IMG/VR virus record: IMGVR_UViG_3300035703_000009
Span: 1 to 64,000 of that record
Strand: one strand, 5' to 3'
Length of the DNA stretch: 64,000 bases
Shown piece after piece: positions 35,748 to 54,883 of the stretch (positions within the stretch are counted from its first letter, which is position 1; each line of letters begins with the position of its first letter). The notes below the pieces were generated by a model. The model searched no databases, had not been told where the DNA came from, and saw only the letters and a program-made list of their open reading frames with translations. A program made the position numbers and the translations under genes.

Positions 35748-36101
35748 ATGGAAAAATTTGAAATTAGACCTTGGGGCTGGTTTGAAGTGTTAACTGAAGA
35801 CGTTAACTATAAAGTTAAAAGATTAGTAGTATGTCCAGGCAAAAGACTCTCATATCAATACCATAATAAAAGAAAAGAACATTGGGTTGTTGTGCAAGGA
35901 GATGGAGTTTTTATCTATGGAAATGATAATTCGACTTTTGAAAAAACTGTGGAAACAGGTAGTTCAATTTTTATTGAAATTGGTGAGTATCATCGTATAC
36001 AAAATACAGGAGAAAGTGATCTGATCATCATTGAAACCCAATTAGGTCAGTGTGATGAAGAAGACATTGTAAGAATAGTTGACGACTTCAATCGAGTCTA
36101 A
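35748..36101 (+). CDS. mannose-6-phosphate isomerase type II cupin domain
   Basis: RPWG, VKRL.V.PG.RLSYQYH..R.EHWVVV, HRIQN, IETQLG and EEDIVR; start revised to 35748. Confidence 0.88.
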   Translation: MEKFEIRPWGWFEVLTEDVNYKVKRLVVCPGKRLSYQYHNKRKEHWVVVQGDGVFIYGNDNSTFEKTVETGSSIFIEIGEYHRIQNTGESDLIIIETQLGQCDEEDIVRIVDDFNRV

Positions 36102-36694
36102 CGATATAGAGTTTCAATGCTCTCATACCTTAAAAAAGAATTAAGGCTTGAATTTGGATTGACTGAAACCATTGAAATCCCTTTACTTTTAAGCAGCTGC
36201 ATATTGAATTTAATCTTTTCAAATCTAGGTAGATACCAATCAGCTCCAACTGAATGGCCGATTTGATTTGAGGAGGAGTTGGATTTTTTCCAAAAATGAC
36301 TGGGGTCTTGCCACTTCAATGAGACTCCAGCAATGTAAAAAATTGAATTTGGAATGTAGTTTGTGTTGAAAAGATCAATTGCGTTTGAAATTGAGTCAGG
36401 AAAGAGTCTCGTATTTTTTCTAGAGTAAACTTTAGTCCATCCTGGTATTTTATTTTTGATGTTCTTTTGTAACCAGTCACTTGAATAAATTGTGGAATTT
36501 CTTTTAAGCTCTTCTAGTTTTTCAGGATAGCGCGAAAGTTCATTTGAAATGATAAGATCAGAAAAAAAGAAATAATTAGGAATAAATTTAAGCCAAATTC
36601 GATTTACACCGAGCGTCACAATGTTTGGATGAATTTTCTCAAAGTCAATTGAATTGATTTGTGGATCGTTACCTAAAACTAAAACTTTAGCCAT
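36098..36694 (-). CDS. sialyltransferase-like (Maf/DUF115/GT42-type) protein
   Basis: VLVLGN.P, TLGVNR, P.Y.FF.D and IAGV pattern. Confidence 0.55.
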   Translation of the reverse strand: MAKVLVLGNDPQINSIDFEKIHPNIVTLGVNRIWLKFIPNYFFFSDLIISNELSRYPEKLEELKRNSTIYSSDWLQKNIKNKIPGWTKVYSRKNTRLFPDSISNAIDLFNTNYIPNSIFYIAGVSLKWQDPSHFWKKSNSSSNQIGHSVGADWYLPRFEKIKFNMQLLKSKGISMVSVNPNSSLNSFLRYESIETLYR

Positions 36695-36986
36695 TCAACC
36701 AGTCTCTAGAGTTCATATTTTTATCGTCAATGAAGACATCATATGCTGGCTTACCAAACTTTAGTTCGTGATACTGGACACCCCAAGTCCTAAGTTGTTG
36801 CTCAGTTAATTGTCTCCAATCGATTCCACTTTTAGTGCCCCTGGCAGTCCAGAAAACGATCTGGTGACCTTCCTCGTATAAAGCATTGACTTTTGCGATT
36901 GCCTGAGGAATCGGAGTCGCAGTTTCATACTTTAGGGACTCAGCTAGAGTGCAGATGGTGTCGTCAATGTCGATGTAGTAGGTCAT
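36687..36986 (-). CDS. capless HAD phosphatase (capsule-biosynthesis type)
   Basis: IDIDDT, WTARG and GKP..DVFIDDK. Confidence 0.85.
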   Translation of the reverse strand: MTYYIDIDDTICTLAESLKYETATPIPQAIAKVNALYEEGHQIVFWTARGTKSGIDWRQLTEQQLRTWGVQYHELKFGKPAYDVFIDDKNMNSRDWLNG

Positions 36987-37266
36987 CTATCTTAATGTTG
37001 TTTTCTTCTTTGAACTTTTCCCAAGCAGCCGCATCCATCATGTCTGGAAAGCGTGAGCCTCCATTGCAAGACTCCTTTACATAGATCTTGCCGGGAAAGG
37101 AACATCCGCAATTGATGCAAAATTCATATACGGCACAGTCATTCTTACAGACCTGTGAACGATAAAAGACTTGCTCTTTTTCGTGCTTAGGCAAGAGGTG
37201 GAACTGGTCGCCCAGCATCTTTAGGTTGCCCTCAATGAACTGGTAGATTTTCTTAGGGGTTATCAT
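36964..37266 (-). CDS. Cys-rich hypothetical protein
   Basis: CxxxC...CxxCGC...C metal-binding pattern. Confidence 0.65.
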   Translation of the reverse strand: MITPKKIYQFIEGNLKMLGDQFHLLPKHEKEQVFYRSQVCKNDCAVYEFCINCGCSFPGKIYVKESCNGGSRFPDMMDAAAWEKFKEENNIKIDDLLHRH

Positions 37267-38153
37267 TTTCCTCTTAATGTTTTTCTTTTGTCAAGTTCAG
37301 ACTTAAGAACTTCTCTGGGGCCGTAACCTCCTCTAGCGCTTTCGATATCACGAATGCTCTTTATCAGCTTAATGAGTCCTTGGGGCTCGACTGAAGCTAT
37401 TTGATCACTGCCCCAAAGAGAACGATCGACTGTGATGTGACGTTCGATCCAGGTGGCTCCAAGCAAAGTTGCAGCAATGGTCGTAGTAAGTCCAAACTCA
37501 TGACCGGAATACCCCACCGCAAATGACTTTGGAAAGTCTTTACCCTTACTGATGTGGCTCAAGTAGGTGATATAGTCGAGATTAAGTTCATGATTTGGAG
37601 CAGGATAAGTAGAGTTAGTATGAAAAACTACATCAGGTCTACATTCAACTACTGCTAAGTCTATTTCCTCTTGTGTGCTCATACCGGTGGAGATAAGGAG
37701 AAAGTCTGAACAGTCTCGTGCGTATTGAATTAGCTCGAGGTCATGGATTAGGGCCGATGGTATTTTCATCATCACTCCCCACTTGCCATTAGGTAAGAGG
37801 GTCTCAAATTTTCGCGCAAAGTCAACTGACTTTTTGTCCCACACTGAGGTAAACCAACGCATTTTTCGAGCTTCGCAATAGTCATCTATTTCCTTGTACT
37901 GTTCATGGGAAAGCTCAATGTCGAGTTTATATTGAAAGTAAGTGGTCGCCTCTTTGCGCCAGGGCACCCTTTTTGTTTTTGACCTTTCCGCTTGAGGAAC
38001 ACACGATTCAGGATCACGTTTTTGAAACTTTACATAATCAACTCCGGAAACTGCCGCAATATCAATAAGTTTTTTTACATTATTGATGAATTCCTTCGTA
38101 GAGGAACCATATGCATAATTTATGCCTATTTCTGCAATTATCGTGGTTTTCAT
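37263..38153 (-). CDS. neuB: N-acetylneuraminate/nonulosonate synthase lacking the C-terminal AFP/SAF domain
   Basis: IIAEIGIN, VKFQKR, KIPSA, ISTGMS, STYP, GYSGHE, IERHIT and GSDQ; start revised to 38153 (ATGA overlap). Confidence 0.92.
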   Translation of the reverse strand: MKTTIIAEIGINYAYGSSTKEFINNVKKLIDIAAVSGVDYVKFQKRDPESCVPQAERSKTKRVPWRKEATTYFQYKLDIELSHEQYKEIDDYCEARKMRWFTSVWDKKSVDFARKFETLLPNGKWGVMMKIPSALIHDLELIQYARDCSDFLLISTGMSTQEEIDLAVVECRPDVVFHTNSTYPAPNHELNLDYITYLSHISKGKDFPKSFAVGYSGHEFGLTTTIAATLLGATWIERHITVDRSLWGSDQIASVEPQGLIKLIKSIRDIESARGGYGPREVLKSELDKRKTLRGK

Positions 38154-39184
38154 GAGTTTACTAGAGAGTTTATCCAAGAAAAAGTTTTTTTCATTCCATC
38201 TACTAAAGGCTGGGAGACTTTCCAACCCATTTTTTCTTCATAAAGTTGGTTGTCTGAATTTCTACCTTTGACTCCAATTGGACACTTGAATCCGTACTTT
38301 TTCTTGAATTCTTCGCCTTCTATATTTTCAATAGAGATATTTTTATTTGAGATTAAGATCGCCATTTCAGCAAGTTGATTAATTGTAACCATCTCTTCAG
38401 AACCGATGTTGACAGGTCCTAAGAATCCATCTTGTCTCATGAATCTAAGAACTGCTTCAACACAATCATCAATGTACAAAAAAGAGCGAGTCTGCATACC
38501 GTCTCCCCAAACTTCTATGATACCTCCGCTCTGGGTTTCTGCTACTTTGCGGCACATTGCAGCGGGAGCCTTTTCCTTACCTCCTTTCCAAGTTCCATAG
38601 GGGCCAAATATGTTATGGAACCTGGCAATTCGCACGTCTAGCCCGTAGTTTCTATGAAAAGCTAAATAAAGTCGCTCACTAAAAAGTTTTTCCCAACCGT
38701 ATTCTGAGTCAGGATTTGCTGGATATGCTGATGACTCTTCACAATTTGGGTTATTTGGATCGAGCTGATTGTGCTCTGGGTACATGCACGCAGAAGAGCT
38801 ATAGAAAATCTTCTTTACTGATTTTTTGACGGCTTCATGTGCAACATTTAAGTTTATTAGAGATGAGTTATGCATTACATTAGCATCGTTATTACCTGTA
38901 AAAATATAACCAGCTCCTCCCATGTCAGCAGCAAGTTGATAAACTTCATCGAAAGATTTTTCTCTGTCCCCTTCAAAAGTTTGATTAGGAGATAACATGA
39001 CACAACTTACAAACTTAGGGTCTCTAAGATCACCTAAAATAAACTCATCACAAAAATCATCTTTATCAAAGTACTCATGAACTTTAATGTCAACTGCTCT
39101 GACCCAAAAGCCTTCTTCCTTTAATTTTTTAGCCAGGTGGCCTCCTATGAAGCCTCCTCCACCAAGTACTAGTGCCTTTTTCAT
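38150..39184 (-). CDS. NAD-dependent epimerase, GDP-mannose 3,5-epimerase-like
   Basis: GGGGFIG, QLAADMGGAGYI, YSSSACMYPE, YGWEK, RFHNIFGP and EKAPAAMCRK. Confidence 0.88.
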   Translation of the reverse strand: MKKALVLGGGGFIGGHLAKKLKEEGFWVRAVDIKVHEYFDKDDFCDEFILGDLRDPKFVSCVMLSPNQTFEGDREKSFDEVYQLAADMGGAGYIFTGNNDANVMHNSSLINLNVAHEAVKKSVKKIFYSSSACMYPEHNQLDPNNPNCEESSAYPANPDSEYGWEKLFSERLYLAFHRNYGLDVRIARFHNIFGPYGTWKGGKEKAPAAMCRKVAETQSGGIIEVWGDGMQTRSFLYIDDCVEAVLRFMRQDGFLGPVNIGSEEMVTINQLAEMAILISNKNISIENIEGEEFKKKYGFKCPIGVKGRNSDNQLYEEKMGWKVSQPLVDGMKKTFSWINSLVNS

Positions 39185-39921
39185 AATTTTCTTTTATTTT
39201 TTTCAAAAATTTTGTCTCCTGGAAAGGAGGCTGTATTTATGAATCCTTTTTGAGTTAAGAAAGCCATCATTTCATCTAGTGAATTTCCTGCCTGAACCGT
39301 ATGCTTTTGGTCCCACTCAATTATAAGAGTAAGGTTATTTGCTTTTTCTAAAAAATCGCTCATACCTTTTAATACATTCATCTCAAACCCTTGAACATCA
39401 ATTTTTATTAACCCAATATCGTAACTTGGATTTTCAAGTAAAAACGTGTCTAATTTTTTACAGACAACTTGCTCAGTAATGTAATTTTTAGAATTCATAT
39501 TAGAGATCGCAACCTCTTTGTTAAAGGAAGCATTGTCTGAGCAATAAGGAATGAATATTTCTTGAGTAGTATCAGAATCAAATAGAGCAAAGTTTAGAAT
39601 TTGCATGTTTTTACAAGAGTTTGCACTTTTACTCTGCTCTAACAATGAAACATTCATACTAAGCGGCTCAACTGATAGTACGGAATAACCATATTTTTCA
39701 GCAGGTATTGAAAACATTCCGCAATTTGCACCAACATCTAACACAGACCTAGATTTATCCATTTTTCTTACAAGATTAAGCATCATAGTGTAATCCTTCA
39801 TCTCATTGAGGTTTGTTCTAGCTTTTATTTTATAGTCAGTGACAAAATAGTCAAAATTAAAGATTACGTATTCAAAATTAGCGTTTTTAAAAATAAATCT
39901 TTCAGGTTTAGTAGAAATCAT
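39181..39921 (-). CDS. FkbM-family methyltransferase
   Basis: LDVGANCG, VEP and IKIDVQGFE. Confidence 0.85.
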   Translation of the reverse strand: MISTKPERFIFKNANFEYVIFNFDYFVTDYKIKARTNLNEMKDYTMMLNLVRKMDKSRSVLDVGANCGMFSIPAEKYGYSVLSVEPLSMNVSLLEQSKSANSCKNMQILNFALFDSDTTQEIFIPYCSDNASFNKEVAISNMNSKNYITEQVVCKKLDTFLLENPSYDIGLIKIDVQGFEMNVLKGMSDFLEKANNLTLIIEWDQKHTVQAGNSLDEMMAFLTQKGFINTASFPGDKIFEKNKRKL

Positions 39922-39932
39922 GAGCGTTTAGA

Positions 39933-40715
39933 TTATTTGAAGTAAGAATCATAATTAAAATCAGATAACTTATTTGAATAGTAATGAGGTCCTATTATTT
40001 TTAAGAATGCGTTTTGGTCCTTGATTCCACCGTCAGTGTCGCTAGCATTAGTCAACTGATTAGCCATACCGGGAGTAAATGAATAGCAGTTTAACGAAGG
40101 CTCAATTAGTATGAATGAGTGATCTATTGCTCGAGATCGGTGCACACACGCGTCCAGTAACTCTACTATTTTAGGTATTGAACTTGGATTAATTAAATAT
40201 GAGTGGCCGCAAAAAGAACCATATACTCGGTGTATGTACTTGATTCCAGTTAACTCATAATCCCCTCCTTTATTCCAACGACTGGGATCATTGTTTAGAT
40301 GATAAAAAGAAGAAAGGAAAAATATGTCCCAATCTAGGTTAAATTTTTCTTCAATGTACTTAAATCTTTCGTTAAAATCTTCGCAGAGAATGACATCATC
40401 TTCAAATATTCCAAGTATCTTATCACTGCTAGTATCGTATTCTTTAATTAGAGTGTAGTGGGAGCGATAGCATTTTTTCTGTCCTTCAGAAAAGGCTGAA
40501 CTAAATGGTATGCTGCAGCCAGATAAGTCTTCGTACGCTCTAAATTTTTTAGCATCGATGTTATGCTTTTTTAATTCAGAATTAACGTGGGCAAGTCTGT
40601 CTACTCTTCTGTCTAAATTTATGAAATAGAAGTCAATGTTCTTTCTTTCTATTTTTAAGAAGGTTTTTGTGTGAGCCATATACTTATGTATTATTTTTGT
40701 CTTATTTTTATCCAT
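39933..40715 (-). CDS. GT25 glycosyltransferase
   Basis: INLDRRVDR, CYRSH and IFEDD. Confidence 0.82.
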   Translation of the reverse strand: MDKNKTKIIHKYMAHTKTFLKIERKNIDFYFINLDRRVDRLAHVNSELKKHNIDAKKFRAYEDLSGCSIPFSSAFSEGQKKCYRSHYTLIKEYDTSSDKILGIFEDDVILCEDFNERFKYIEEKFNLDWDIFFLSSFYHLNNDPSRWNKGGDYELTGIKYIHRVYGSFCGHSYLINPSSIPKIVELLDACVHRSRAIDHSFILIEPSLNCYSFTPGMANQLTNASDTDGGIKDQNAFLKIIGPHYYSNKLSDFNYDSYFK

Positions 40716-41530
40716 CTTTCTGGAGTCAAAGCATTAGTATCAAAGCTTTGATAGTCTGGTCCAAACCACTCATCTGGATAAGGACAGTAAACAAGCTTAT
40801 CCGTAGATTTTGATAAATATGCAGCCCACCATGAAAAAGTACTGTTTGCAATAATGAAGTGGTCACACAAAGACTGAGCTATGAAGTCACTAATATAATC
40901 ATCGCTATAGTCAAAATAAGTAATAGGTTTTTGATATTTTTCAAATTTTCCAAATATGAATTCTTTAGTATCTTCATTATCAGTAAAGATGCATATTTCA
41001 TCGATGCTTTTTTTAGATAAAATGTCTTCTATACTTCTTTGATAGTATTCTAAAGTAAGAACTGGGTGTCTATGCTCGACACCTTTATGCCCTCCTCCAA
41101 ATTTACGATCATACTGATCACCCCAGCGTATGTGAATCGAAAGTTTCTTTGAGTTCTGATTCATTTTACTATTAACCTTTTCTATAATAGTTGGGTCAAA
41201 GACCAAATACTCAAGTACTTTTTTTTCATAATCATCAAAAAACAAAGAGGACTGAAAATATCCTACTATTTCTACTAATTTATCACTAGTTGGAATATTG
41301 TGGATTCCAAATTTAGATTCCTTATGAGTCAGTGAAATATTTGACTTTATTTTGACAGAGGAACGTGTAGGTAGATTTGGAAAAAGCTTTGCGTGCTCCC
41401 ACTCAGATGGAACAAAAAAGCTACTGTTGTTCTTAATTGCTTGACCAATAATAGTCGCAACTCTAAACAATTGATTGCCAAGGCGTCCATGACGATGGTC
41501 TAATATTTGCAAAGTAGTGAAACCTTTCAT
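40691..41530 (-). CDS. GT11 alpha-1,2-fucosyltransferase-like
   Basis: GRLGNQLF, GYFQS, HIRWGD and IIANSTFSWWAAYL. Confidence 0.9.
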   Translation of the reverse strand: MKGFTTLQILDHRHGRLGNQLFRVATIIGQAIKNNSSFFVPSEWEHAKLFPNLPTRSSVKIKSNISLTHKESKFGIHNIPTSDKLVEIVGYFQSSLFFDDYEKKVLEYLVFDPTIIEKVNSKMNQNSKKLSIHIRWGDQYDRKFGGGHKGVEHRHPVLTLEYYQRSIEDILSKKSIDEICIFTDNEDTKEFIFGKFEKYQKPITYFDYSDDYISDFIAQSLCDHFIIANSTFSWWAAYLSKSTDKLVYCPYPDEWFGPDYQSFDTNALTPERWIKIRQK

Positions 41531-41546
41531 ATTTAAAAATTGTTTT

Positions 41547-44366: not shown

Positions 44367-44376
44367 CGTAGTTCAT

Positions 44377-45138: not shown

Positions 45139-46204
45139 TCTTGATTTGATTTTTTACTTCTTCTCGATTATCTAATACTAACACTTCATATCCAAGTTCT
45201 GCTAAAGCTACTGCGTATTTTAGCTGTTGAGACTCCTCAATTAAGGTACTTTCTGCCTTATATGTAACGTATGGTAACTCTACTTTAATTGATTTATCGG
45301 GATTAGCTTTAATAAAGTCCTCGATTTGATATTGTAAATGTTTTTCATTCATTTCATCGGTTGCTTTAGAGATTACTGCATCGATTCCTACTTCTTCGCC
45401 ACACTTAGCTAGTGCTCTATTATCCCTAGGAAAACAGGGACCTCCGAATCCAAAACCAGGTCTTAAATATTTGTTTCCAATTCTTGAGTCAGTTCCGATC
45501 GCCTTTAAAACGACATCTGCATTGCACTCTAGTCTTTTTGCAATATCGCCGACCATGTTTGCAAAACTGATCTTGGTTGTCAAAAAGCAGTTTACTGAAA
45601 GTTTAGTCAATTCAGCTTCGGTGCAGCTCATCCTATTAAAAATTGGGCTAGAATCACACAGTCTTTCGTAAACTTGCTGTATACGATTGCCTGCATCAAG
45701 GTCAGCTTGCCCAATCAATACGTTATCACAATTTAGTTGATCTTTAATGATTGTGCCTTGTGCTATAAATTCTGGATTATAGGAGACTTTATAATTGTAT
45801 TCAGATAGCTTATTTTGAAGAGTCTCGCAATATCCAGGAAAGGTGGTACAATTTATTATTAAGTCTTTTCTTGTTTCTTGTTTTCCAAAAGAGATTAGCT
45901 TTTCTGCAATCTGCTCTATTTGTGAATGGTCATATTTCCAATCGTTAGTTGAAGGAGTTCTGACCACAACAAAAATGAGATTACTCTCTAGCGCTCTTTC
46001 CAAATTAGTTGTAAATTCTACATTTTTAGATTCAATCAAAAATTCATTTACGTATGGTTCTGATGTTCGAAAAGACTTTGAAGAAAGAGCATCTATGTAA
46101 TCTTGAGAAACATCTACGCCTAGTACAAAATATCCTTTTCTCTCTAAATTTAAAGCTAAACATAAGCCAAGTTTACCTACTCCGATTATCGAAATTTTGT
46201 TCAT
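45104..46204 (-). CDS. ugd: UDP-glucose/GDP-mannose 6-dehydrogenase
   Basis: GVGKLG, YNPEF, KISFAN and GFGGPCFPRD. Confidence 0.9.
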   Translation of the reverse strand: MNKISIIGVGKLGLCLALNLERKGYFVLGVDVSQDYIDALSSKSFRTSEPYVNEFLIESKNVEFTTNLERALESNLIFVVVRTPSTNDWKYDHSQIEQIAEKLISFGKQETRKDLIINCTTFPGYCETLQNKLSEYNYKVSYNPEFIAQGTIIKDQLNCDNVLIGQADLDAGNRIQQVYERLCDSSPIFNRMSCTEAELTKLSVNCFLTTKISFANMVGDIAKRLECNADVVLKAIGTDSRIGNKYLRPGFGFGGPCFPRDNRALAKCGEEVGIDAVISKATDEMNEKHLQYQIEDFIKANPDKSIKVELPYVTYKAESTLIEESQQLKYAVALAELGYEVLVLDNREEVKNQIKNVTTTNFKVVE

Positions 46205-46868
46205 TTTTTACCATTTTTTGATTATTTATCGTTTTTTTAGTTAAGTGCTTAGTATTTTTGATAAAACGATCTATTATGAAATCGTAATTTACTTCTTTTT
46301 TTTCTATGTCGCTATGTCCTGGAATCTGAATAGCAGCTAACGGATAGCTACCGAAACACTCAAACTTACTTTGAACATTTTTTGCGAGCCATACATCAAT
46401 TATTTCGATGTTATTATTTTCAAAAGCATGCAATATAAAGTCAAATATTGTAGAATTATACGCTATTGCGTGTGCAGCATAACAGTTAGTTATTTTTAAG
46501 AGGTTTGGGCTCACTTGACTAAGTGAGGAATGACTATTATATCCAAGGTAATAGAGAGCCCAATGAGTCCTCTGTAGCTGATCTATCGCAGGAGGAATAA
46601 AGTTAATATTCATTAGTTCAAAGTCATCTTCGAAGACCAAAACATTTTTTAAGCCTAATGCTTTTGCTCTTTTGATTGTTTCTATGTGAGAAAGTAGACA
46701 GCCTTGACGACCGTTGCCGTCTGGAGGAACTATGCCTGAGAGTCTCTCAACGCGATCAGCTATTCCTAGCTGGTTAAAAATAGTCAACGCTCTAGCTAAG
46801 CGATCTGGTCTAGAATCTAAATTAATTAAGTAAATCTTTTGAAAATAATTAAATGCTTCCTTTATCAT
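46173..46868 (-). CDS. GT25 glycosyltransferase
   Basis: INLDSRPDR, GCLLSH and VFEDD. Confidence 0.85.
   Translation of the reverse strand: MIKEAFNYFQKIYLINLDSRPDRLARALTIFNQLGIADRVERLSGIVPPDGNGRQGCLLSHIETIKRAKALGLKNVLVFEDDFELMNINFIPPAIDQLQRTHWALYYLGYNSHSSLSQVSPNLLKITNCYAAHAIAYNSTIFDFILHAFENNNIEIIDVWLAKNVQSKFECFGSYPLAAIQIPGHSDIEKKEVNYDFIIDRFIKNTKHLTKKTINNQKMVKNEQNFDNRSR
46223..46229 (-). promoter_or_regulatory. late promoter ATAAATA inside the glycan island
   Basis: GATAAATAAT on the minus strand, 19 nt before the ugd ATG, matching the spacing at structural genes. Confidence 0.6.
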
Positions 46869-47482
46869 GCGTCAATTTTACCCAGATGACAAACAACGTA
46901 ATCTGGAGTATCTATTTTATAGTGTTTTTCCTTTAAGATATGACTAATACTGGTCCAATCATGGCCATATCCGTCCGCCCATTGAAATGAGCAAGCACGA
47001 CGGTGGCAAATTGAACTTGTACCGATCCTATTTGCCTTGGGCTCGACCGTCCTTTTCCATTTTTTTTCTCCATTAAAGATATAATCGTCATAGTAACACC
47101 AAACATACTCTGAATCTTTAAAGCCACTAAGTATCTCAAGGTGTGTACTTCCAAAATAATCATCACTGTCTAAATAGCACACAATCTCGCCTGTGGATTG
47201 AGTTAAACCGGCTTGCCTAACTGTTCCGCTAAATAAGGGTTGTTTTGGAAGTTCAATCAAACGCACAGCTGAAAAATTAGAGTATTTTTCTCGAGTTATT
47301 TTTGAAGTTTTTTCGCAGCCGTCACTCACAATTATGAGCTCAGCACTCTTAAAAGTCTGGTCCAAAAAAGAATTTACTGCGCGTCTAAATTTGAACTCAC
47401 GATTTGAGGCAGCTTCAAACCCTCCACTAGTGTAGTGATCTAAATATGAAGCCATGATTACAGTTATCCTTGGAGAATTCAT
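46865..47482 (-). CDS. GT2 glycosyltransferase
   Basis: ITVIMASY, ELIIVSDG and YLDSDD. Confidence 0.85.
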   Translation of the reverse strand: MNSPRITVIMASYLDHYTSGGFEAASNREFKFRRAVNSFLDQTFKSAELIIVSDGCEKTSKITREKYSNFSAVRLIELPKQPLFSGTVRQAGLTQSTGEIVCYLDSDDYFGSTHLEILSGFKDSEYVWCYYDDYIFNGEKKWKRTVEPKANRIGTSSICHRRACSFQWADGYGHDWTSISHILKEKHYKIDTPDYVVCHLGKIDA

Positions 47483-48195
47483 GACAGTTCGTTGATTTTT
47501 AAAAAAGTTGGCTTAAAAGCACATAGATCAAAACATACATCCAGCTTTCCATGAGAAAAACCCATCTTTTTATACTCAGAAACATCACGATTTGAGATCC
47601 CAGGAATCCTAGGAGTTATTCCTTGAAAATGTATTATTGGAGAACTAGTAATGATTGCAAAATTCCATCCTTTTCTATAGAGCATATCATATAGGTAATC
47701 ATCTCCGCAAAAAAAGTGCAGATTTCTTGGAATTTGAGAGTATGCGGACCTACGCATGGTAAAGTCCCAACCTTGACGGTACTTACCATGAAAAATTCGA
47801 TATTCAAGTTGTGTACAAGACTGATAATTTGGGTGATTTGTTGAGTGAGCAACGCAGCCTACTCGCGGTTCTCTTTCAAAGACGTCAAGAGTGTCCTTAA
47901 TGAAATTTTTTGGAATTATTAGGTCGTTATTTAAAAAACAGCACAACTCATAATTATTTTTAAGAGCAAAATCGTTCCACACGTGGTTTAGTGGACGATT
48001 TTGTCCTGTATATTCTATCTTCTTTAAAAAGGAAAAAGAAAGTTGATCTAGGGACTCTCTAGTGCCGGGCTCAGTAGACCCATTATCGACGACTGTCAAC
48101 TCGAAATCCAGGCAACTCTGAACCGACAGTTGCGTAATTAGATCAATTGTATACTTTATATGATTTCTGTTAATTATTATTACGCCTAATTTCAT
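47479..48195 (-). CDS. GT2 glycosyltransferase
   Basis: VVDNGS, FLNND and GDD. Confidence 0.85.
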   Translation of the reverse strand: MKLGVIIINRNHIKYTIDLITQLSVQSCLDFELTVVDNGSTEPGTRESLDQLSFSFLKKIEYTGQNRPLNHVWNDFALKNNYELCCFLNNDLIIPKNFIKDTLDVFEREPRVGCVAHSTNHPNYQSCTQLEYRIFHGKYRQGWDFTMRRSAYSQIPRNLHFFCGDDYLYDMLYRKGWNFAIITSSPIIHFQGITPRIPGISNRDVSEYKKMGFSHGKLDVCFDLCAFKPTFLKINELS

Positions 48196-49052
48196 AAAGA
48201 ATCGTATATTTTAGTAAATTCGTTTACTATTGTTTGAGGATGCCAGTGTTGTTCCATCCAACTCCTACTTTCCTTTCCTTTTTCAAGAATAAAATCAAGA
48301 CCGGCATCGACTATTTTGTTTAGTTCCGTCTCAAGGGAATTGATCCAAACGTTGAAAAAAGGAGAAACTTGAGCACCAGAGGAAGAGAGTAGTATTTTTT
48401 CAACGTCTGGAGAAAGAGAGCATATTGTGAGTTTGCCAAGTGCAAGTCCTTCTAAACCTGATCTATGATAGCTTGAAGTAACGCACTCATCTATAATTAT
48501 GTTGCATTTTGATTTGCGAGCAATACAAGCATCAAGAGAGACTCCAGTTATCACATCAATTTCTACAGAGGTGCCATACTCTCTTTTAATCTTGTTAAGT
48601 ACTGCAAGAGTCTGATCATATCCCTTATCGTGCCACTTACCGAGTTTTTTTGTTCGGCTTGGAGAAAAACCTATTTTAATTGCATGTGAAACCTGCTGAG
48701 AAGAATATTGCGGAGTTGTGAAGTCAATCACATTTCTAACTATTGAGCAGCCTGAATACTCTGGCAGAGTTGCATGATATTGAGAAATTACTAACTTGCG
48801 GTCAACTCGGCTTTTTAGGTCTACTTGAAAAGGTTCGCTATGGTATTGCAAAACAGTTTTGATCCCATGCCGATTGCCAGGTAAGAGATTATGAGCATGT
48901 AGAATACTACCTGCTGGGAAGGCACGCATAGCCGGTGCACCTAATCCTGCCATCTCGCATCGATAGCCTTGACCGAATTTATTGATGGCTTTAGCTAATT
49001 CTAAAGGAGCTTGAGCAATAGGTGTTTGTCTATAGTGATAAACTATTTTCAT
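48192..49052 (-). CDS. GT-B (GT4-like) glycosyltransferase
   Basis: KG...NIIIDE...SGLEGLALGK C-terminal GT-B motif. Confidence 0.65.
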   Translation of the reverse strand: MKIVYHYRQTPIAQAPLELAKAINKFGQGYRCEMAGLGAPAMRAFPAGSILHAHNLLPGNRHGIKTVLQYHSEPFQVDLKSRVDRKLVISQYHATLPEYSGCSIVRNVIDFTTPQYSSQQVSHAIKIGFSPSRTKKLGKWHDKGYDQTLAVLNKIKREYGTSVEIDVITGVSLDACIARKSKCNIIIDECVTSSYHRSGLEGLALGKLTICSLSPDVEKILLSSSGAQVSPFFNVWINSLETELNKIVDAGLDFILEKGKESRSWMEQHWHPQTIVNEFTKIYDSL

Positions 49053-49055
49053 TAT

Positions 49056-50513
49056 TTACTTTTTTTTTAATATTCCTGGTTCGCCTTTTTCAAATTTACA
49101 AGTAAGATACTTTAACTCTAACAAGTAATTATGCACACTAGAAATATTCTTATCTGAATTTGATCTAAATATTGAATTTAATCCGTTTGTGTAGCCGTTA
49201 AAACCAAACAGGGACAGTGAATAGTGCGGAATCTTTAACTCCTCTAATAACAAAATCATGCTAAGTCCACTAGTTGGAAGAAGATAGCTTTTTTTTAAAG
49301 CGGCAGATATAGAAATTAGAGCAGGGTAGTGGTAGTTTAGTATTTTCTTGCTAGGATAACTAGCACAAATGTCACTGACTGCTTTGTGCCAAAGATCAAT
49401 AGGTTTTGAGAAAACTATCAAATAATCTGAGGGTTGGTCTAAATTAAATCTAGCCTGCCGAAATATGCAGTGAACGCTTGTTTTAGTGCCGGTGTGAGTA
49501 GGTTCGATTGGATAACCGTTGAATCTAATAACTACATCATGTGAATCAATTAGTTCTCCATGTTGGTGTTCTAAAAGTTCTGAAGAATTTGCGATTATTG
49601 CTATTTTTTTGCCAGTTAAATACTCTTTGAATGAACTTAATGAAGTTAACTTAGATTTAAGTAAAAATCTGTTTTCAGAAGATCTATTCAGTGTAATTGG
49701 TATTGAACTATTTTGCTGTTTTACATGAGGAATCGGCCTAGGTTGTTCTTCGGCATTTATAGTTTGTCTATCAGAATTAAAAGAACTCGGCTGGACTAAA
49801 AATTGGCTACTTTCTTTGTTTTTAAAAAGCCACACTTGATTGATTTTAGAATATTGAGCTGAGTTGTTTAGAGTTGTGAAAAGAATTACATCTTTAGACT
49901 CTAAGGAAGCTCGCATAGTTATAAATTTAGAGTCTAAGTATTCATTTGAAAAAGAAATGTTAGCTTCAGAATAAAAACTAGGATTTAGACAAGAATTCAA
50001 GTGATTATTTAGTTGTAAATCTAACGAATTGGAAGTTAACATTCTATTTGAGAGTTCATGGTAAACTTCTTCAGATAATGATATTTTTTCACTTAGGTGA
50101 AAAAAGAGAACTGAATTGAGCGCTTTGCCTAACTTATTTTCAGATATGAAATTACAGCTTTTTTGAAAAATTGAATAGTTAGAAAAGTATAGTAAACTTT
50201 CGTTTTCTGTAGATTCATTAAATACTGTCCATTTTAGAGCAGAGTTCACCAGTTCAAAATATTGCACTCGTCCCTTATATTTGTCTATTACACTAAAAAT
50301 AGGATGCGACGTTTGTAATTTTATTGCGAGCTTTGGATAAATTTTAAGAAGAATGTCATAATTCCTAGTGGATAATTGATCCATAGGATGATCGAGTAGG
50401 TTAATTGTACCAGTAAACCATGGATTGTTTTTTATAAAAGAAAAAATACTGGTTCTAAGTAGGTGAAAATTTTTGTTAGTGGCCTCAGTATACGCATTAA
50501 CTATCTTATCCAT
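49056..50513 (-). CDS. two-domain protein with C-terminal GT29 sialyltransferase-like domain
   Basis: IAIIANS..LL...GELIDSHDVVIRFN...GTKT (sialylmotif L), PTSG...LFGF (S) and VH (VS-like). Confidence 0.75.
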   Translation of the reverse strand: MDKIVNAYTEATNKNFHLLRTSIFSFIKNNPWFTGTINLLDHPMDQLSTRNYDILLKIYPKLAIKLQTSHPIFSVIDKYKGRVQYFELVNSALKWTVFNESTENESLLYFSNYSIFQKSCNFISENKLGKALNSVLFFHLSEKISLSEEVYHELSNRMLTSNSLDLQLNNHLNSCLNPSFYSEANISFSNEYLDSKFITMRASLESKDVILFTTLNNSAQYSKINQVWLFKNKESSQFLVQPSSFNSDRQTINAEEQPRPIPHVKQQNSSIPITLNRSSENRFLLKSKLTSLSSFKEYLTGKKIAIIANSSELLEHQHGELIDSHDVVIRFNGYPIEPTHTGTKTSVHCIFRQARFNLDQPSDYLIVFSKPIDLWHKAVSDICASYPSKKILNYHYPALISISAALKKSYLLPTSGLSMILLLEELKIPHYSLSLFGFNGYTNGLNSIFRSNSDKNISSVHNYLLELKYLTCKFEKGEPGILKKK

Positions 50514-51151
50514 TTTACTTGATCTAAGTCTTTTTGAGTGTCGACGTCAACTACATCTTCGATCGGGTAGAACACGGTAGACGGGCCGTACATATTCTTA
50601 TTTAATTTATAGAGAGCAGAAGCTCTAAAGATGCACATGTAGTGACTGATCTCAAAGCACTTTGGATAGTCTTGGCGTCGGTATAGATCGTGTTCAAGTA
50701 AAGGCTTGCCGAAAACGCCGTCTGCTCCATGCTCCTGTAACATGAGATAAGGTGAGACTTTAAGTTCCTTCTTACATAGCATAGAATCAGCAAGACCTAA
50801 GTCAGCAAACTGACAGTAATATTCATAAGCCGCGTAAATCTCTTTCCAGGTCCTCTCTGGATAGGTTAAGTAGAGCATTATTACTTCAGCAGACATGGGA
50901 AGCCCGACGTTTTTTACGGCGTGTTGCATCACGTCCCGAATGTTAGCAGAGTCGTCTGATAGTTCAGAAGGACGATCGATTGCACAACACCCATGCTTAA
51001 TGGCTAACTGAAATATCTCAGGGTCGTCGGTCGTCACAAAAACACGTCTACGAAGAGACTCTGGAATCGAGTCTATTGTCGCTTTAAAAAGCTTACGGTT
51101 CTTAAAGGGTAGGCCCTTGGAACCCAGTCTGGCTGGAATGATGATGTTCAT
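50501..51151 (-). CDS. neuA: CMP-nonulosonate (acylneuraminate) cytidylyltransferase
   Basis: IIPARLGSKGLPFKN, VTTDD, RP.ELS.D, RRQD and DVDT..D. Confidence 0.92.
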   Translation of the reverse strand: MNIIIPARLGSKGLPFKNRKLFKATIDSIPESLRRRVFVTTDDPEIFQLAIKHGCCAIDRPSELSDDSANIRDVMQHAVKNVGLPMSAEVIMLYLTYPERTWKEIYAAYEYYCQFADLGLADSMLCKKELKVSPYLMLQEHGADGVFGKPLLEHDLYRRQDYPKCFEISHYMCIFRASALYKLNKNMYGPSTVFYPIEDVVDVDTQKDLDQVKWIR

Positions 51152-51765
51152 AGTTGATCGAACTCTTTGAGAGTTATTTTTGGAATCTGTAGGTTACTAG
51201 ACTCGCTCAAGTTGTAAAAAGATACTCCGCGCCTTTCAAGCTCAGCTCTAAGCTTTTGATAAGCAAGATTGACCTTAGTCAGGTGCTTAGTCTTAACGAC
51301 ACTGTGCGCTCCATCCTTGGGATTATAAAAGTGCCCGTCTGTAAAGTCGACACCAATAACGCCGATGTGTTTTGCTCCCAATCGATACGCTAGGCAGACC
51401 GCACAATACGGCGAATTCAAATAGTGATCGAGATGGTTCTTTTTATCTAGACAAGTCAGCTCTCGAGTACCTAACTCAAAATAGATTAGGCTAGTGTGTC
51501 GCCAGCCCCTGGCGCAAGTAAAGAGGTGTTTTGACTTTGACTGTACTACTAGGTCCTTGCGTTTACCGACAAACCGTAATGGGCTGTCTGTGACTAGTAA
51601 ATAGGTCGGAGTAAAAAGGGCCGGCACGTCGTTGACTCCGATCGTGGTGTATCGTTCCGCATGTTCAGCAAAGCCCAGCAGAGAAGTGCCACAGCCACAG
51701 ACTATGATCTTTTCACCTGAATGCGGACGGTCAATGTCCTTAAGAGATTTGATTAAGCTAGACAC
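51148..51765 (-). CDS. sialyltransferase-like (Maf/DUF115/GT42-type) protein
   Basis: VCGCGTSL, TIGVND and AYRLGAKHIGVIGVDF...HFY. Confidence 0.65.
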   Translation of the reverse strand: MSSLIKSLKDIDRPHSGEKIIVCGCGTSLLGFAEHAERYTTIGVNDVPALFTPTYLLVTDSPLRFVGKRKDLVVQSKSKHLFTCARGWRHTSLIYFELGTRELTCLDKKNHLDHYLNSPYCAVCLAYRLGAKHIGVIGVDFTDGHFYNPKDGAHSVVKTKHLTKVNLAYQKLRAELERRGVSFYNLSESSNLQIPKITLKEFDQL

Positions 51766-51799
51766 TTAGATAAATTATTTTAAAACCTAGTCTTCAATT

Positions 51800-51828: not shown

Positions 51829-51830
51829 AA

Positions 51831-52826: not shown

Positions 52827-52851
52827 CTTAAAAAATCTCCCAAAAGCCTTA

Positions 52852-52858
52852 ATAAATA
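52852..52858 (+). promoter_or_regulatory. late promoter in the loop of a 10-bp hairpin
   Basis: AAAGCCTTAA (52843-52852) / TTAAGGCTTT (52869-52878); 19 nt before the TTG start. Confidence 0.75.
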
Positions 52859-52876
52859 ATAAAAAAATTTAAGGCT

Positions 52877-54856: not shown

Positions 54857-54883
54857 TCAAAAACTAAAAAAATCAACTCAAAA

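What the first reader, a model, noticed from the sequence alone, without database searches (positions are those of the whole stretch)
35748..51765. Phage-encoded nonulosonic (sialic/KDN-type) acid synthesis, activation and transfer pathway
Seen: NeuB synthase, a HAD phosphatase two genes away, NeuA CMP-transferase, three sialyltransferase-like proteins (36098, 49056, 51148) and a mannose-6-P isomerase cupin. No NeuC epimerase or Pse/Leg aminotransferase is present in the window. Known: KDN is made from mannose-6-P plus PEP via KDN-9-P synthase, a HAD phosphatase and CMP-KDN synthetase. Inference: the phage builds a KDN- or sialic-capped glycan from central metabolites. The island sits between baseplate and capsid genes, suggesting virion glycosylation; host-surface remodelling is the alternative.
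Basis: partly seen in the sequence, partly recalled or inferred. Interest (0 to 1): 0.8.

Follow-up and report, generated by a model that had tools for sequence, protein, structure and literature searches.

The report
Phage-encoded sialic-type sugar glycan island
A 207-kb freshwater phage carries a 21-gene island that can probably make, activate and attach a nine-carbon sialic-acid-type sugar (most likely Kdn) as part of a larger methylated glycan, a capacity I found in almost no deposited phage genome, though what the glycan decorates is still unknown.

Summary
Window 36098-51765 holds 21 tightly packed minus-strand genes between the baseplate hub and the DnaJ, prohead protease and capsid genes. 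Its GC is 0.36, against 0.43 for the rest of the window.

Related lake phages keep the same insertion site and the same two end modules, but swap the middle genes. NeuB lacks the SAF domain and is nearly always next to the HAD gene. No ManNAc-forming or Pse/Leg enzyme was found in the window. These points fit a 9-phosphate route with Kdn as the best guess, but this is untested.

None of the 21 proteins has a membrane segment, so the glycan is assembled in the cytoplasm. Virion proteins and host lipooligosaccharide both remain possible targets.

The cupin is absent from every relative and could equally feed GDP-mannose.

Verdict: new variant of a known kind; interest about 0.6.

The parts
35748..36101 (+). 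Stand-alone cupin of the mannose-6-phosphate isomerase (type II PMI C-terminal) family, 117 aa. It converges on the island, and its stop overlaps the stop of the 198-aa gene.
   Evidence: PF01050 5e-26 and Cupin_2 5.9e-8. Only generic cupins match in PDB. No homologue in any of 31 related viral loci.
36098..36694 (-). 198-aa sialyltransferase-fold protein (GT42/CstII- and Maf-like). Conserved end module.
   Evidence: No Pfam, NCBIfam or PHROG hit. AF2 pLDDT 84. Foldseek top 9 are CstII 1.9e-5, Pasteurella sialyltransferase 9c08, CstI 2p56 and Maf 5mu5. Atlas neighbours are MptE-like/WaaZ_KDO_III/Maf. 45-61% identical in 11 relatives.
36687..36986 (-). Minimal HAD phosphatase, 99 aa, with motifs DxDxT, T, K and D all conserved.
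   Evidence: Sequence. Invariant D6, D8, T10, T47, K79, D88 in 15 homologues. PDB 9iqw capsule biosynthesis protein 6.4e-18, 1xpj, BT0820 2obb. phrog_1238 7e-28. Adjacent to NeuB in near and distant viral loci.
36964..37266 (-). Cys-rich 100-aa protein of unknown function, always between NeuB and HAD in near relatives.
   Evidence: phrog_13610 1.7e-19. 17 loci carry it. Phage-only Atlas clusters with no SAF-like features.
37263..38153 (-). NeuB-family nonulosonate (or nonulosonate-9-P) synthase, 296 aa, without the C-terminal SAF/antifreeze-like domain.
   Evidence: PF03102 5.6e-55. Below the NeuB_NnaB and PseI equivalog cut-offs. PDB hits at 1e-15 or weaker. The 119 listed relatives are 59-84% identical and 283-320 aa long. 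Sits in a virus-only clade next to SAF-less cellular NeuB.
38150..39184 (-). GDP-mannose 3,5-epimerase (makes GDP-L-galactose and GDP-L-gulose).
   Evidence: 3e-90, full length, to Arabidopsis GME 2c59. 82% identical copy in L009.
39181..39921 (-). FkbM-family methyltransferase (RfbT-like).
   Evidence: TIGR01444 5.1e-24, PF05050 1e-17, RfbT 5.4e-8.
39933..40715 (-). GT25 glycosyltransferase.
   Evidence: PF01755 2.1e-12.
40691..41530 (-). GT11 (alpha-1,2-fucosyltransferase family) glycosyltransferase. Likely partner of the GME product.
   Evidence: PF01531 3.4e-14. GT11 genes also occur in relatives' islands.
41547..42464 (-). 305-aa protein, unknown.
   Evidence: No hit in Pfam, NCBIfam or PHROGs.
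42464..43171 (-). Weak FkbM-like methyltransferase.
   Evidence: PF05050 5.2e-4, TIGR01444 4.6e-5, both below cut-off.
43168..43809 (-). FkbM-family methyltransferase.
   Evidence: TIGR01444 2.1e-20, PF05050 8.5e-16.
43806..44366 (-). 186-aa protein, unknown.
   Evidence: No hit.
44377..45138 (-). NadE-type NH3-dependent NAD+ synthetase homologue.
   Evidence: TIGR00552 6e-52 (above cut-off), PF02540 4.2e-50, phrog_11189 4.6e-86. Absent from sampled relatives.
45104..46204 (-). Nucleotide-sugar 6-dehydrogenase (best match UDP-glucose dehydrogenase).
   Evidence: TIGR03026 5.3e-72, above cut-off. PF00984 and PF03721 at about 2e-29.
46173..46868 (-). GT25 glycosyltransferase.
   Evidence: PF01755 5.7e-7.
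46865..47482 (-). GT2 glycosyltransferase.
   Evidence: PF00535 3.5e-12. 73% identical copy in L015.
47479..48195 (-). GT2 glycosyltransferase, part of the conserved right-hand module.
   Evidence: PF00535 4.1e-10. 68-71% identical in L015 and L017. Same position in L034, L117 and L119.
48192..49052 (-). 286-aa conserved protein of unknown function. Follows the GT29 gene in most relatives; L119 has an unannotated 225-aa gene there.
   Evidence: No family or PDB hit. 214 homologues, none with a Pfam family or an informative name.
49056..50513 (-). Two-domain protein. The N-terminal GT8/glycogenin-fold domain has FSN where GT8 enzymes have DxD. The C-terminal domain is GT29-like sialyltransferase.
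   Evidence: PF00777 9.7e-9. ST3Gal1 3.6e-6, or 7.6e-9 with a profile. AF2 pLDDT 74. Foldseek: glycogenin 1.4e-8, ST6Gal1 6e-6. BFVD top hit is a 'GT29' of an uncultured phage, 8e-31. Only 18 full-length relatives found. Invariant motifs listed.
50501..51151 (-). CMP-nonulosonate synthetase (NeuA/PseF-like cytidylyltransferase).
   Evidence: PF02348 8e-8. TIGR03584 PseF 2.4e-17. CMP-Neu5Ac synthetases 6ifd 5e-12 and 1eyr 2.3e-10.
51148..51765 (-). 205-aa MptE/Maf-like putative CMP-sugar transferase. First gene of the island.
   Evidence: phrog_4603 alpha-2,3-sialyltransferase 6.2e-5. PF01973 0.084. hhalign to the 198-aa family E 2e-4. Atlas MptE-like/WaaZ_KDO_III. 50-61% identical in 6 relatives.
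34949..35743 (+). Left flank: baseplate hub (gp5-like). Conserved anchor of the insertion site.
   Evidence: phrog_430 2e-19. 77-86% identical in 11 near relatives and 52-60% in two partial matches.
51831..56554 (+). Right flank: DnaJ, prohead protease and T4-type major capsid protein.
   Evidence: PF00226 5e-27. phrog_207 and phrog_138. MCP is 38% identical to a 462-kb uncultured phage and 32% to Lak phages.

Best explanation
The island is a working glycan factory of a large freshwater myovirus. Its two conserved ends form a self-contained nonulosonic-acid module. In this module a SAF-less NeuB condenses PEP with a hexose 6-phosphate, most likely mannose-6-P, giving Kdn-9-P. The adjacent small HAD phosphatase removes the 9-phosphate. 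The NeuA-like enzyme makes the CMP-sugar. Up to three sialyltransferase-fold proteins then attach it: a GT29-like domain fused to a degenerate GT8 domain, and two small CstII/Maf/MptE-like proteins. The variable middle supplies further donors (GDP-L-galactose from GDP-mannose via GME, and a uronic acid via the dehydrogenase), linkage enzymes (GT2 x2, GT25 x2, GT11) and O-methyl caps (FkbM x2-3). All 21 products are soluble, so assembly takes place in the infected cell's cytoplasm on a soluble or inner-leaflet acceptor. I rate phage structural proteins (virion glycosylation) as the most likely acceptor. Shown here: gene identities, folds, conserved catalytic motifs, conserved synteny, and the conserved-ends/variable-middle architecture. 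Inferred: the substrate (Kdn), the order of steps, activity of the enzymes, and the acceptor.
For: Enzyme identities. Sialyltransferase folds. Conserved catalytic residues across relatives. Same insertion site and end modules on many independent viral and metagenome contigs, with a different middle in each. All 8 new loci with strong homologues of the GT29 protein (L120-L127) also carry NeuB, the CMP-synthetase and the HAD gene. NeuB-HAD adjacency also holds in distant viral loci with NeuB only 34-52% identical, in either gene order. NeuB has no SAF domain. That domain carries R314, the residue tied to substrate binding in N. meningitidis NeuB (PMC8208679). The nearest cellular NeuB clade is SAF-less and includes about 37 distinct Streptomyces sequences, several with NeuA just upstream. 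In S. coelicolor, NeuA and NeuB lie in the Kdn-teichulosonic-acid cluster (PMC3479208, PMC13011467, PMC11481543). The known Kdn routes use Man-6-P, then a phosphatase, then a CMP-synthetase (PMC6200933). No protein has a hydrophobic segment. The position between baseplate and head genes is conserved. Transferases diverge much faster than flanking genes: GT29 is 37-39% identical where NeuB is 67-77% and the baseplate hub 84-86%. Island GC is below flank GC in every relative. The phage sequence occurs in about 20 metagenome runs, mostly lake water, from many studies.
Against: There is no biochemical, transcript or glycan evidence; no RNA run was listed. NeuB scores below the equivalog cut-offs for both Neu5Ac and pseudaminic acid synthases, and it could not be compared with a characterised Kdn-9-P synthase. 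The HAD belongs to a different HAD subgroup from the known Kdn-9-P and Neu5Ac-9-P phosphatases, and members of its family also occur in viral loci without NeuB. Only 64 of 207 kb were visible, so precursor genes such as NeuC or NanE could lie elsewhere or be supplied by the host. Some relatives carry DegT- and PglD-like genes in the middle. GT25, GT8, GT11 and GT42-type soluble enzymes are typical of lipooligosaccharide outer-core synthesis, so a host-envelope target fits the same data. Sialylmotifs S, III and VS of the GT29 domain are only tentatively identified.
Confidence: 0.45

Rival explanations
1. Same chemistry, different target. The island remodels the infected host's envelope (LOS/LPS core or capsule precursors at the inner leaflet). 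This could block superinfection, or stop progeny being lost on infected cells and debris, as proposed for cyanophage LPS gene clusters and shown for seroconverting phages.
For: GT25, GT8-fold, GT11, GT2 and CstII-like enzymes are the families that build LOS outer cores as soluble or peripheral enzymes (established knowledge of Neisseria, Haemophilus and Campylobacter LOS loci). No phage-encoded flippase or ligase would be needed, which matches the lack of any membrane protein. The two small transferases resemble the WaaZ Kdo-III transferase family. There is an extra GT25 elsewhere in the genome. Predicted hosts of similar freshwater jumbo phages are Gram-negative Bacteroidota (PMC12619734).
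Against: The island sits inside the structural module at a site conserved across the lineage. The phage looks lytic, since no integrase was seen in the window. Maf-type relatives are protein O-glycosyltransferases. Virion glycosylation by phage-encoded transferases has precedent (Freeman 2023, cited in PMC12619734).
Confidence: 0.3
2. The sugar is not Kdn. NeuB uses ManNAc-6-P or ManNAc (giving Neu5Ac), or another hexose derivative supplied by the host or by genes outside the window. In that case the HAD serves another sugar-phosphate step.
For: Best named matches are Neu5Ac and pseudaminic acid synthases and CMP-Neu5Ac synthetases. The HAD family also occurs without NeuB, and PHROGs files it under heptose metabolism. 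143 kb of the genome was unseen. DegT- and PglD-like genes occur in relatives. The S. coelicolor cluster also holds a putative ManNAc-6-P 2-epimerase (PMC3479208).
Against: No NeuC, GNE, NanE, PseB/C/H/G or LegB/C/H/G in the island or among the window ORFs checked. NeuB orthologues 77% identical sit in islands with and without DegT/PglD genes, so those genes are not tied to NeuB. The SAF domain with R314 is missing (PMC8208679). NeuB-HAD pairing is conserved.
Confidence: 0.3
3. The glycan hypermodifies phage DNA rather than protein or lipid, as T4-like and other phages do with glycosyltransferases.
For: The phage has a T4-type capsid protein. Virus glycosyltransferases can decorate DNA with diverse glycans (Pyle 2024, cited in PMC12619734). 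All island enzymes are cytoplasmic.
Against: No hydroxymethylase or base-modifying gene was seen in the island or among the window ORFs scanned. None of the transferases resembles a known DNA glucosyltransferase. A methylated, nonulosonate-capped, multi-sugar chain on DNA has no precedent.
Confidence: 0.03
4. Artefact: an assembly chimera or bacterial DNA mis-binned as phage, or a decaying gene cluster.
For: Lower GC than the flanks. The nearest named homologues are bacterial or eukaryotic.
Against: The same flanks and end modules recur on many independent contigs from IMG/VR, ENA and Logan. 66-91% of sampled 31-mers from 46000-52000 occur in about 20 runs from other studies. All 21 ORFs are intact, with overlapping stop/start junctions and conserved catalytic motifs.
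Confidence: 0.02

Closest known systems
Kdn pathway of Bacteroides thetaiotaomicron and Prymnesium parvum (Kdn-9-P synthase, Kdn-9-P phosphatase, CMP-Kdn synthetase; PMC6200933)
   Same: A NeuB-family synthase, a HAD phosphatase and a CMP-synthetase are encoded together, with no ManNAc-forming enzyme. Man-6-P is a universal precursor.
   Different: Activity is untested. NeuB has no SAF domain. The phosphatase is a 99-aa member of the 'capsule biosynthesis phosphatase'/BT0820-like HAD group, not the known Kdn-9-P phosphatase type. The genes sit in a phage and are split across the two ends of a glycosyltransferase cassette.
Streptomyces teichulosonic-acid (Kdn-Gal polymer) cluster SCO4873-SCO4882 (PMC3479208, PMC13011467, PMC11481543)
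   Same: A SAF-less NeuB belongs to the nearest cellular clade (43% identity). In several loci NeuA lies directly upstream. Glycosyltransferases are adjacent.
   Different: The Streptomyces transferases are GT38-like, GT2 and DUF6716, not GT29/GT42-like. No phage-type HAD is present. The product is a wall polymer of a Gram-positive bacterium.
LOS sialylation loci of Campylobacter, Neisseria and Haemophilus (neuBCA plus cst/lst with GT25, GT8 and GT2 transferases)
   Same: Soluble sequential glycosyltransferases of the same families, a CstII-fold sialyltransferase, and hypervariable gene content between strains.
   Different: No NeuC. NeuB lacks SAF. A GT29-like enzyme and FkbM methyltransferases are present. 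The carrier is a virus and the acceptor is unknown.
Eukaryotic and viral GT29 sialyltransferases (PMC10225777)
   Same: Sialylmotif L is significant at sequence level. The fold is the GT-A variant. A colinear PTSG motif and an invariant H-x4-E are candidates for motifs S and VS.
   Different: No transmembrane anchor. No conserved motif L/S cysteines. Fused to a DxD-less GT8-fold domain. Only about 30% identical over the motif. Automatic 'GT29' labels already exist for uncultured phage and giant-virus proteins.
Virus-encoded virion glycosylation (mycobacteriophage capsid and tail-tube glycans; chlorovirus and mimivirus glycan gene clusters) and glycosyltransferase-rich freshwater jumbo 'moraphages' (PMC12619734)
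   Same: Glycosyltransferase clusters encoded by the virus next to structural genes. The setting is a freshwater jumbo phage with DnaJ and a Lak-like capsid protein.
   Different: None of those reports, as far as my searches reached, describes a nonulosonate pathway. Membership of this phage in the moraphage lineage was not tested.

Membership tests
NeuB / nonulosonate synthase family (PF03102) | NeuB TIM-barrel domain | tested here: met
   PF03102 5.6e-55 over residues 53-299 of the 320-aa ORF.
NeuB / nonulosonate synthase family (PF03102) | Conserved catalytic and metal-binding residues (Lys/Gln, Ser, two His, Glu, Asp) | tested here: met
   Invariant K42, Q44, K130, S133, S155, S216, H218, E237, H239 and D250 in 20 viral homologues. 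The mapping onto N. meningitidis residues is from memory and PMC8208679.
NeuB / nonulosonate synthase family (PF03102) | C-terminal SAF/antifreeze-like domain carrying R314 | tested here: not met
   296 aa with no SAF hit. The 119 listed relatives are 283-320 aa. This matches the SAF-less 'environmental' group of PMC8208679.
Neu5Ac synthase or pseudaminic acid synthase equivalogs (TIGR03569, TIGR03586) | Score above NCBIfam's equivalog cut-off | tested here: not met
   161.5 bits against a 399.65 cut-off, and 114 bits against 340.25.
Kdn pathway (Kdn-9-P synthase, phosphatase, CMP-Kdn synthetase) | Synthase uses mannose-6-phosphate | not testable with these tools
   Needs an enzyme assay, or at least a phylogeny with characterised Kdn-9-P synthases.
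Kdn pathway (Kdn-9-P synthase, phosphatase, CMP-Kdn synthetase) | A dedicated phosphatase encoded with the synthase | tested here: met
   A HAD with complete motifs lies two genes from NeuB. The adjacency is conserved in near and distant viral loci.
Kdn pathway (Kdn-9-P synthase, phosphatase, CMP-Kdn synthetase) | Phosphatase homologous to the known Kdn-9-P or Neu5Ac-9-P phosphatases | tested here: not met
   Best matches are 9iqw 'capsule biosynthesis protein', 1xpj, BT0820 (2obb), TIGR01689 and HAD_PNKP. No match named as a Kdn-9-P or Neu5Ac-9-P phosphatase was returned.
Kdn pathway (Kdn-9-P synthase, phosphatase, CMP-Kdn synthetase) | CMP-nonulosonate synthetase present | tested here: met
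GT29 sialyltransferases | Sialylmotif L (donor binding) | tested here: met
   PF00777 9.7e-9. ST3Gal1 7.6e-9 with the family profile. Invariant ANS..L..G..IDS.D..IRFN.
GT29 sialyltransferases | Sialylmotifs S, III and VS with a catalytic His | tested here: inconclusive
   PTSG aligns colinearly with motif S of ST6Gal1, but below threshold. H461 and E466 are invariant but lie in or beside a low-confidence stretch of the model, 442-462. Motif III was not identified.
GT29 sialyltransferases | GT-A variant 2 fold | tested here: met
   Foldseek ST6Gal1 6.4e-6, TM 0.50 on the target.
GT29 sialyltransferases | Type II membrane anchor and conserved motif L/S disulfide | tested here: not met
   No hydrophobic segment. 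The invariant columns of the family alignment, which include the motif L and S positions, contain no cysteine.
GT42 / Maf / MptE-like CMP-ulosonate transferases (198-aa and 205-aa proteins) | CstII/Maf-type fold | tested here: met
   For the 198-aa protein, the nine best PDB matches are all CstII, CstI, a Pasteurella sialyltransferase or Maf. The 205-aa protein was not modelled; it is linked only by hhalign E 2e-4 and the Atlas.
GT42 / Maf / MptE-like CMP-ulosonate transferases (198-aa and 205-aa proteins) | Significant match to the family's sequence model (PF01973 or a GT42 member) | tested here: not met
   198 aa: no hit. 205 aa: PF01973 E 0.084, 13.1 bits against a 34.6 cut-off. Profiles of both families find nothing in PDB.
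GDP-mannose 3,5-epimerase | Full-length similarity to characterised GME | tested here: met
   3e-90, residues 4-341 against 32-341 of Arabidopsis GME.
Phage virion-glycosylation systems | Glycan detected on capsid or tail proteins | not testable with these tools
   Needs virions. Only the genomic position next to structural genes is shown.

The most novel reading that the evidence does not exclude
A widespread lineage of freshwater jumbo phages coats its own virions with a strain-specific, O-methylated glycan capped by Kdn. The sugar would be made entirely from central metabolites by a phage-borne pathway and attached by a cytoplasmic, anchor-less GT29-type sialyltransferase. This would be a phage 'glycocalyx' under diversifying selection. 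The phage and prokaryote GT29-like clade might also bear on where eukaryotic sialyltransferases came from.
Probability: 0.25. Interest if true: 0.8.

Novelty: new variant of a known kind. Interest (0 to 1): 0.6.

Why it matters
Nonulosonic acids are usually discussed as cell-surface sugars that viruses bind, not sugars that phages make. In 50,697 deposited phage records only two carry a NeuB homologue and none carries this GT29 fusion. My literature searches found no report of a phage nonulosonate pathway. The lineage is nonetheless common in lake metagenomes.

If the enzymes are active, several things follow:
- The known range of viral glycobiology extends to sialic-type sugars in bacteriophages.
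- Compact soluble enzymes become available for chemoenzymatic sialylation or Kdn-ylation: a 296-aa synthase, a 99-aa phosphatase, and 200-aa and anchor-less GT29-type transferases.
- The conserved-ends/variable-middle island gives a natural system for asking what selects for glycan diversity on, or caused by, phages.

Tried and rejected
- **Nucleotide similarity.** Megablast of 24 kb against GenBank phages found no match.
- **Promoters and terminators.** Counts equalled the shuffled expectation, so the scan was uninformative. The host may also not use sigma-70-type promoters.
- **tRNAs.** None were found.
- **PDB profile searches.** The 198-aa and 205-aa family profiles hit nothing. The 286-aa protein also gave nothing.
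- **Is the Cys-rich 100-aa ORF a split-off SAF domain of NeuB?** Rejected. It belongs to a phage-only family with no SAF-like features.
- **Are the 99-aa and 100-aa ORFs a frameshifted single HAD?** Rejected. The 99-aa protein alone carries all four HAD motifs, and both ORFs are kept separate in every relative.
- **Does NadE amidate the uronic acid made by the neighbouring dehydrogenase?** Unsupported. It scores as a bona fide NadE domain and belongs to a phage NAD-synthetase PHROG.
- **Expression evidence.** No RNA run was listed.
- **PDB entry 9iqw.** A literature search for it found nothing.
- **Characterised Kdn-9-P synthases.** Their sequences could not be obtained, so the NeuB tree has no functional anchors.
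- **Does every GT29-motif phage protein travel with NeuB?** No. Only 11 of the 78 new loci carrying such a protein have NeuB within 10 kb. The 8 strongest homologues (E 1e-61 or better) all do.

Full report
**What the window is.** The window is the first 64 kb of a 207,110-bp IMG/VR contig (IMGVR_UViG_3300035703_000009), and window coordinates equal contig coordinates. It encodes portal, DNA polymerase, helicase, topoisomerase II, baseplate hub, prohead protease, a T4-type major capsid protein, MazG and PhoH. The capsid protein is nearest to an uncultured 462-kb phage (38%) and to Lak phages (32%). There is no nucleotide-level match in GenBank phages. For the stretch 46000-52000, 66-91% of the sampled 31-mers occur in about 20 runs from many studies, mostly lake-water metagenomes. 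The general description fits the recently described freshwater 'moraphages' (PMC12619734): a jumbo genome, DnaJ beside the head genes, a Lak-like capsid, many glycosyltransferases, and predicted Bacteroidota hosts. I did not test membership of that lineage.

**The observation.** Between the baseplate hub (34949-35743, +) and DnaJ (51831-52826, +) lie 21 minus-strand ORFs, 36098-51765. Most have overlapping stop/start junctions. Island GC is 0.357 against 0.434 for the rest of the window.
- NeuB: PF03102 5.6e-55.
- HAD phosphatase, 99 aa: it carries DxDxT, T, K and D motifs that are invariant in 15 homologues. Its family profile hits the PDB 'capsule biosynthesis protein' 9iqw at 6.4e-18.
- Cytidylyltransferase: nearest to PseF and to CMP-Neu5Ac synthetases.
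- PMI-type cupin at 35748-36101 on the plus strand: PF01050 5e-26.

**The three 'sialyltransferase-like' proteins.** All three are supported, to different degrees.
- The 485-aa protein hits GT29 sialylmotif L by Pfam (9.7e-9) and pig ST3Gal1 with the family profile (7.6e-9). Its AlphaFold model (pLDDT 74) splits into two domains. The N-terminal domain has a glycogenin/GT8 fold (1.4e-8). The C-terminal domain resembles ST6Gal1 (6e-6).
- In the 17-sequence family alignment the N-terminal domain has FSN where GT8 enzymes have DxD, and it has almost no invariant residues. The C-terminal domain keeps ANS..L..G..IDS.D..IRFN, PTSG, and H461-x4-E466.
- The 198-aa protein has no sequence-family hit at all. 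Its model (pLDDT 84) nonetheless finds only CMP-nonulosonate transferases as its nine best PDB matches: CstII 1.9e-5, a Pasteurella sialyltransferase, CstI and Maf.
- The 205-aa protein has only weak links: a PHROG alpha-2,3-sialyltransferase hit (6e-5), a profile-profile match to the 198-aa family (E 2e-4), and MptE-like/WaaZ/Maf neighbours in the Atlas.

The nonulosonate genes make up the two ends of a much larger glycan cassette. In transcription order the island reads:
- 205-aa transferase, CMP-synthetase, GT8-like+GT29 protein, a conserved 286-aa unknown, then GT2, GT2 and GT25;
- a nucleotide-sugar dehydrogenase (TIGR03026 5.3e-72) and a NadE-type NAD synthetase (TIGR00552 6e-52);
- an unknown, an FkbM methyltransferase, a weak FkbM-like gene, and another unknown;
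- GT11, GT25, another FkbM methyltransferase, and a full-length GDP-mannose 3,5-epimerase (3e-90 to Arabidopsis GME);
- NeuB, a Cys-rich 100-aa unknown, the HAD, and the 198-aa transferase.

GME together with a GT11 'fucosyltransferase-family' enzyme suggests L-galactose or L-gulose in the glycan. The FkbM enzymes, one of them RfbT-like, suggest O-methyl caps.

**Comparative anatomy.**
- NeuB retrieved 31 related viral loci, and further contexts came from ENA and Logan assemblies.
- In the near lineage the insertion site is fixed, with the baseplate hub on one side and DnaJ, protease and capsid protein on the other. Both end modules are conserved.
- The middle differs between relatives. L034, L117 and L119 carry a short DegT-like gene, a PglD/hexapeptide acetyltransferase, MaoC or PhyH, GT11 and GT2 where the window has its own set. 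Island length ranges from 7.4 to 10.9 kb in relatives, against 15.7 kb here.
- The transferases diverge much faster than their neighbours. In L006, L015 and L017 the GT29 protein is 37-39% identical, while NeuB is 67-77% and the baseplate hub 84-86%.
- Island GC is below flank GC in every relative.
- The cupin has no homologue in any relative.

**Which sugar.**
- NeuB is 296 aa, because the database gene call starts at M25. It lacks the SAF/antifreeze-like domain, and it scores below the equivalog cut-offs for both Neu5Ac and pseudaminic acid synthases.
- The catalytic residues are invariant across 20 viral homologues.
- In a 106-sequence tree, one branch (SH-aLRT 98) separates all the viral NeuBs from the 80 cellular sequences. 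Those 80 are SAF-less enzymes of Planctomycetota, Chloroflexota, Bacteroidota, Chlorobiota, Ignavibacteriota and about 37 Streptomyces. The tree is unrooted, and no donor can be named.
- In several of these Streptomyces loci a NeuA homologue lies directly upstream of NeuB. In S. coelicolor the NeuA/NeuB pair belongs to the cluster for teichulosonic acid, a Kdn-galactose polymer (PMC3479208, PMC13011467, PMC11481543).
- NeuB and the small HAD gene are adjacent throughout the near lineage. They are also adjacent, in either order, in distant viral loci whose NeuB is only 34-52% identical.
- In known biology a phosphatase is needed only when the synthase uses a hexose 6-phosphate (PMC6200933).
- No NeuC, GNE, NanE or Pse/Leg enzymes occur in the island or in the window ORFs I checked.

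Together these points make a 9-phosphate route likely and Kdn the best single guess. The caveats are real:
- There is no functional anchor in the tree.
- The HAD is from a different subgroup than the known Kdn-9-P and Neu5Ac-9-P phosphatases, and its family also occurs without NeuB.
- 143 kb of the genome is unseen.

**Linkage of transferase and pathway.**
- A profile search found 78 further viral loci carrying GT29-motif proteins. The 8 with the strongest homologues (L120-L127, E 1e-61 or better) all carry NeuB, the CMP-synthetase and the HAD gene.
- Of the other 70, which mostly have short (about 230 aa) weak relatives, only 3 have NeuB within 10 kb.
- So this fusion protein is tied to the pathway. 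The wider family probably uses a host CMP-sugar, for which CMP-Kdo is the obvious candidate. One or both of the small transferases here might do the same.

**Where the glycan goes.**
- None of the 21 proteins has a hydrophobic segment long enough for a membrane helix or a signal peptide. The one window above the 1.6 threshold is at residue 33 of NadE, inside its NAD-synthase domain match (residues 4-245).
- There is no flippase, polymerase, ligase or initiating phosphoglycosyltransferase. Assembly is therefore cytoplasmic.
- This fits direct glycosylation of phage proteins, as with Maf on flagellin or the mycobacteriophage capsid and tail glycans. The conserved position inside the structural module and the fast-evolving transferases point the same way.
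- It also fits stepwise extension of lipid A-core at the inner leaflet. That needs only soluble GT25, GT8, GT11 and GT42-type enzymes and would be exported by host machinery.
- I rate the targets at roughly 45% virion proteins, 30% host envelope, and the remainder other or unknown. A 590-aa fibre-like protein with UspA1-type repeats just downstream of the capsid gene is an untested candidate acceptor.

**Novelty.**
- Only 2 of 50,697 deposited phage records have a NeuB homologue, a 484-kb uncultured phage and a marine single-cell virus. None has the GT29 fusion.
- Full-text searches found no report of a phage nonulosonate pathway. The moraphage paper mentions core glycosyltransferases but not sialic acids.
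- On the other hand, JGI and UniProt already label such genes automatically as 'N-acetylneuraminate synthase' and 'GT29'. All the enzyme families are known, and virus-encoded glycan clusters are known.
- I therefore class this as a new variant of a known kind.

Noticed in passing
window 38150-39184 (-) and 40691-41530 (-): A full-length GDP-mannose 3,5-epimerase (3e-90 to plant GME) lies two genes from a GT11 transferase. This implies a GDP-L-galactose or GDP-L-gulose branch in a phage glycan. The PMI-type cupin could serve this branch rather than Kdn.
   Followed up: partly
window 44377-45138 (-) and 45104-46204 (-): A NadE-type NAD+ synthetase overlaps a UDP-glucose-dehydrogenase-like gene inside the island. 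Both are absent from the sampled relatives. It may top up NAD+ for the dehydrogenase or relate to NAD-depleting defences. An amidation role for the uronic acid has no support.
   Followed up: partly
window 36964-37266 (-): A Cys-rich 100-aa protein (phrog_13610) always sits between NeuB and the HAD gene in near relatives. It belongs to a phage-only family of unknown function.
   Followed up: partly
window 48192-49052 (-): A 286-aa protein follows the GT29 gene in most relatives; L119 has an unannotated 225-aa gene there. It has 214 homologues, on contigs up to 484 kb, none with a Pfam family or an informative name. It has no PDB match.
   Followed up: partly
window 49056-50513 (-), residues about 1-240: The GT8/glycogenin-fold N-terminal domain has FSN where GT8 enzymes have the DxD metal-binding motif, and it has almost no invariant residues. 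It is possibly a non-catalytic acceptor-binding domain.
   Followed up: partly
loci L128-L197 (viral contigs): About 67 viral contigs carry short (about 230 aa) proteins with a GT29-type motif L but have no NeuB within 10 kb, and most have no CMP-synthetase gene either. They may use host CMP-Kdo.
   Followed up: partly
window 3438-4094 (-): There is an additional GT25 glycosyltransferase (PF01755 2.7e-9) far outside the island.
   Followed up: no
window 57746-59518 (+): A 590-aa protein with UspA1 adhesin 13-residue repeats and a beta-roll lies downstream of the capsid protein and MazG. It looks fibre-like and is a possible glycan acceptor.
   Followed up: no
window 24386-26296 (+): A 636-aa protein has weak RNA-ligase and cytidylyltransferase-like (PF01467) hits. 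With NadE, this hints at phage NAD metabolism.
   Followed up: no
L113 (Streptomyces sp. NPDC059454) 1478-8873: Next to the SAF-less NeuB lie a GT38 polysialyltransferase-like gene, a GT2 and a DUF6716 putative glycosyltransferase. There is also an ORF with weak local similarity to the phage GT29 motif (8e-9 over 86 aa).
   Followed up: partly
L020 (IMGVR_UViG_GVMAG-M-3300005613-41_000001): A contig binned as a giant-virus MAG carries a NeuB 49% identical to the phage enzyme, at the contig end.
   Followed up: no
window 5807-6988 (-), 18735-19523 (+), 56652-57020 (+): The phage also encodes an SPFH/Band-7 protein, PhoH and MazG.
   Followed up: no
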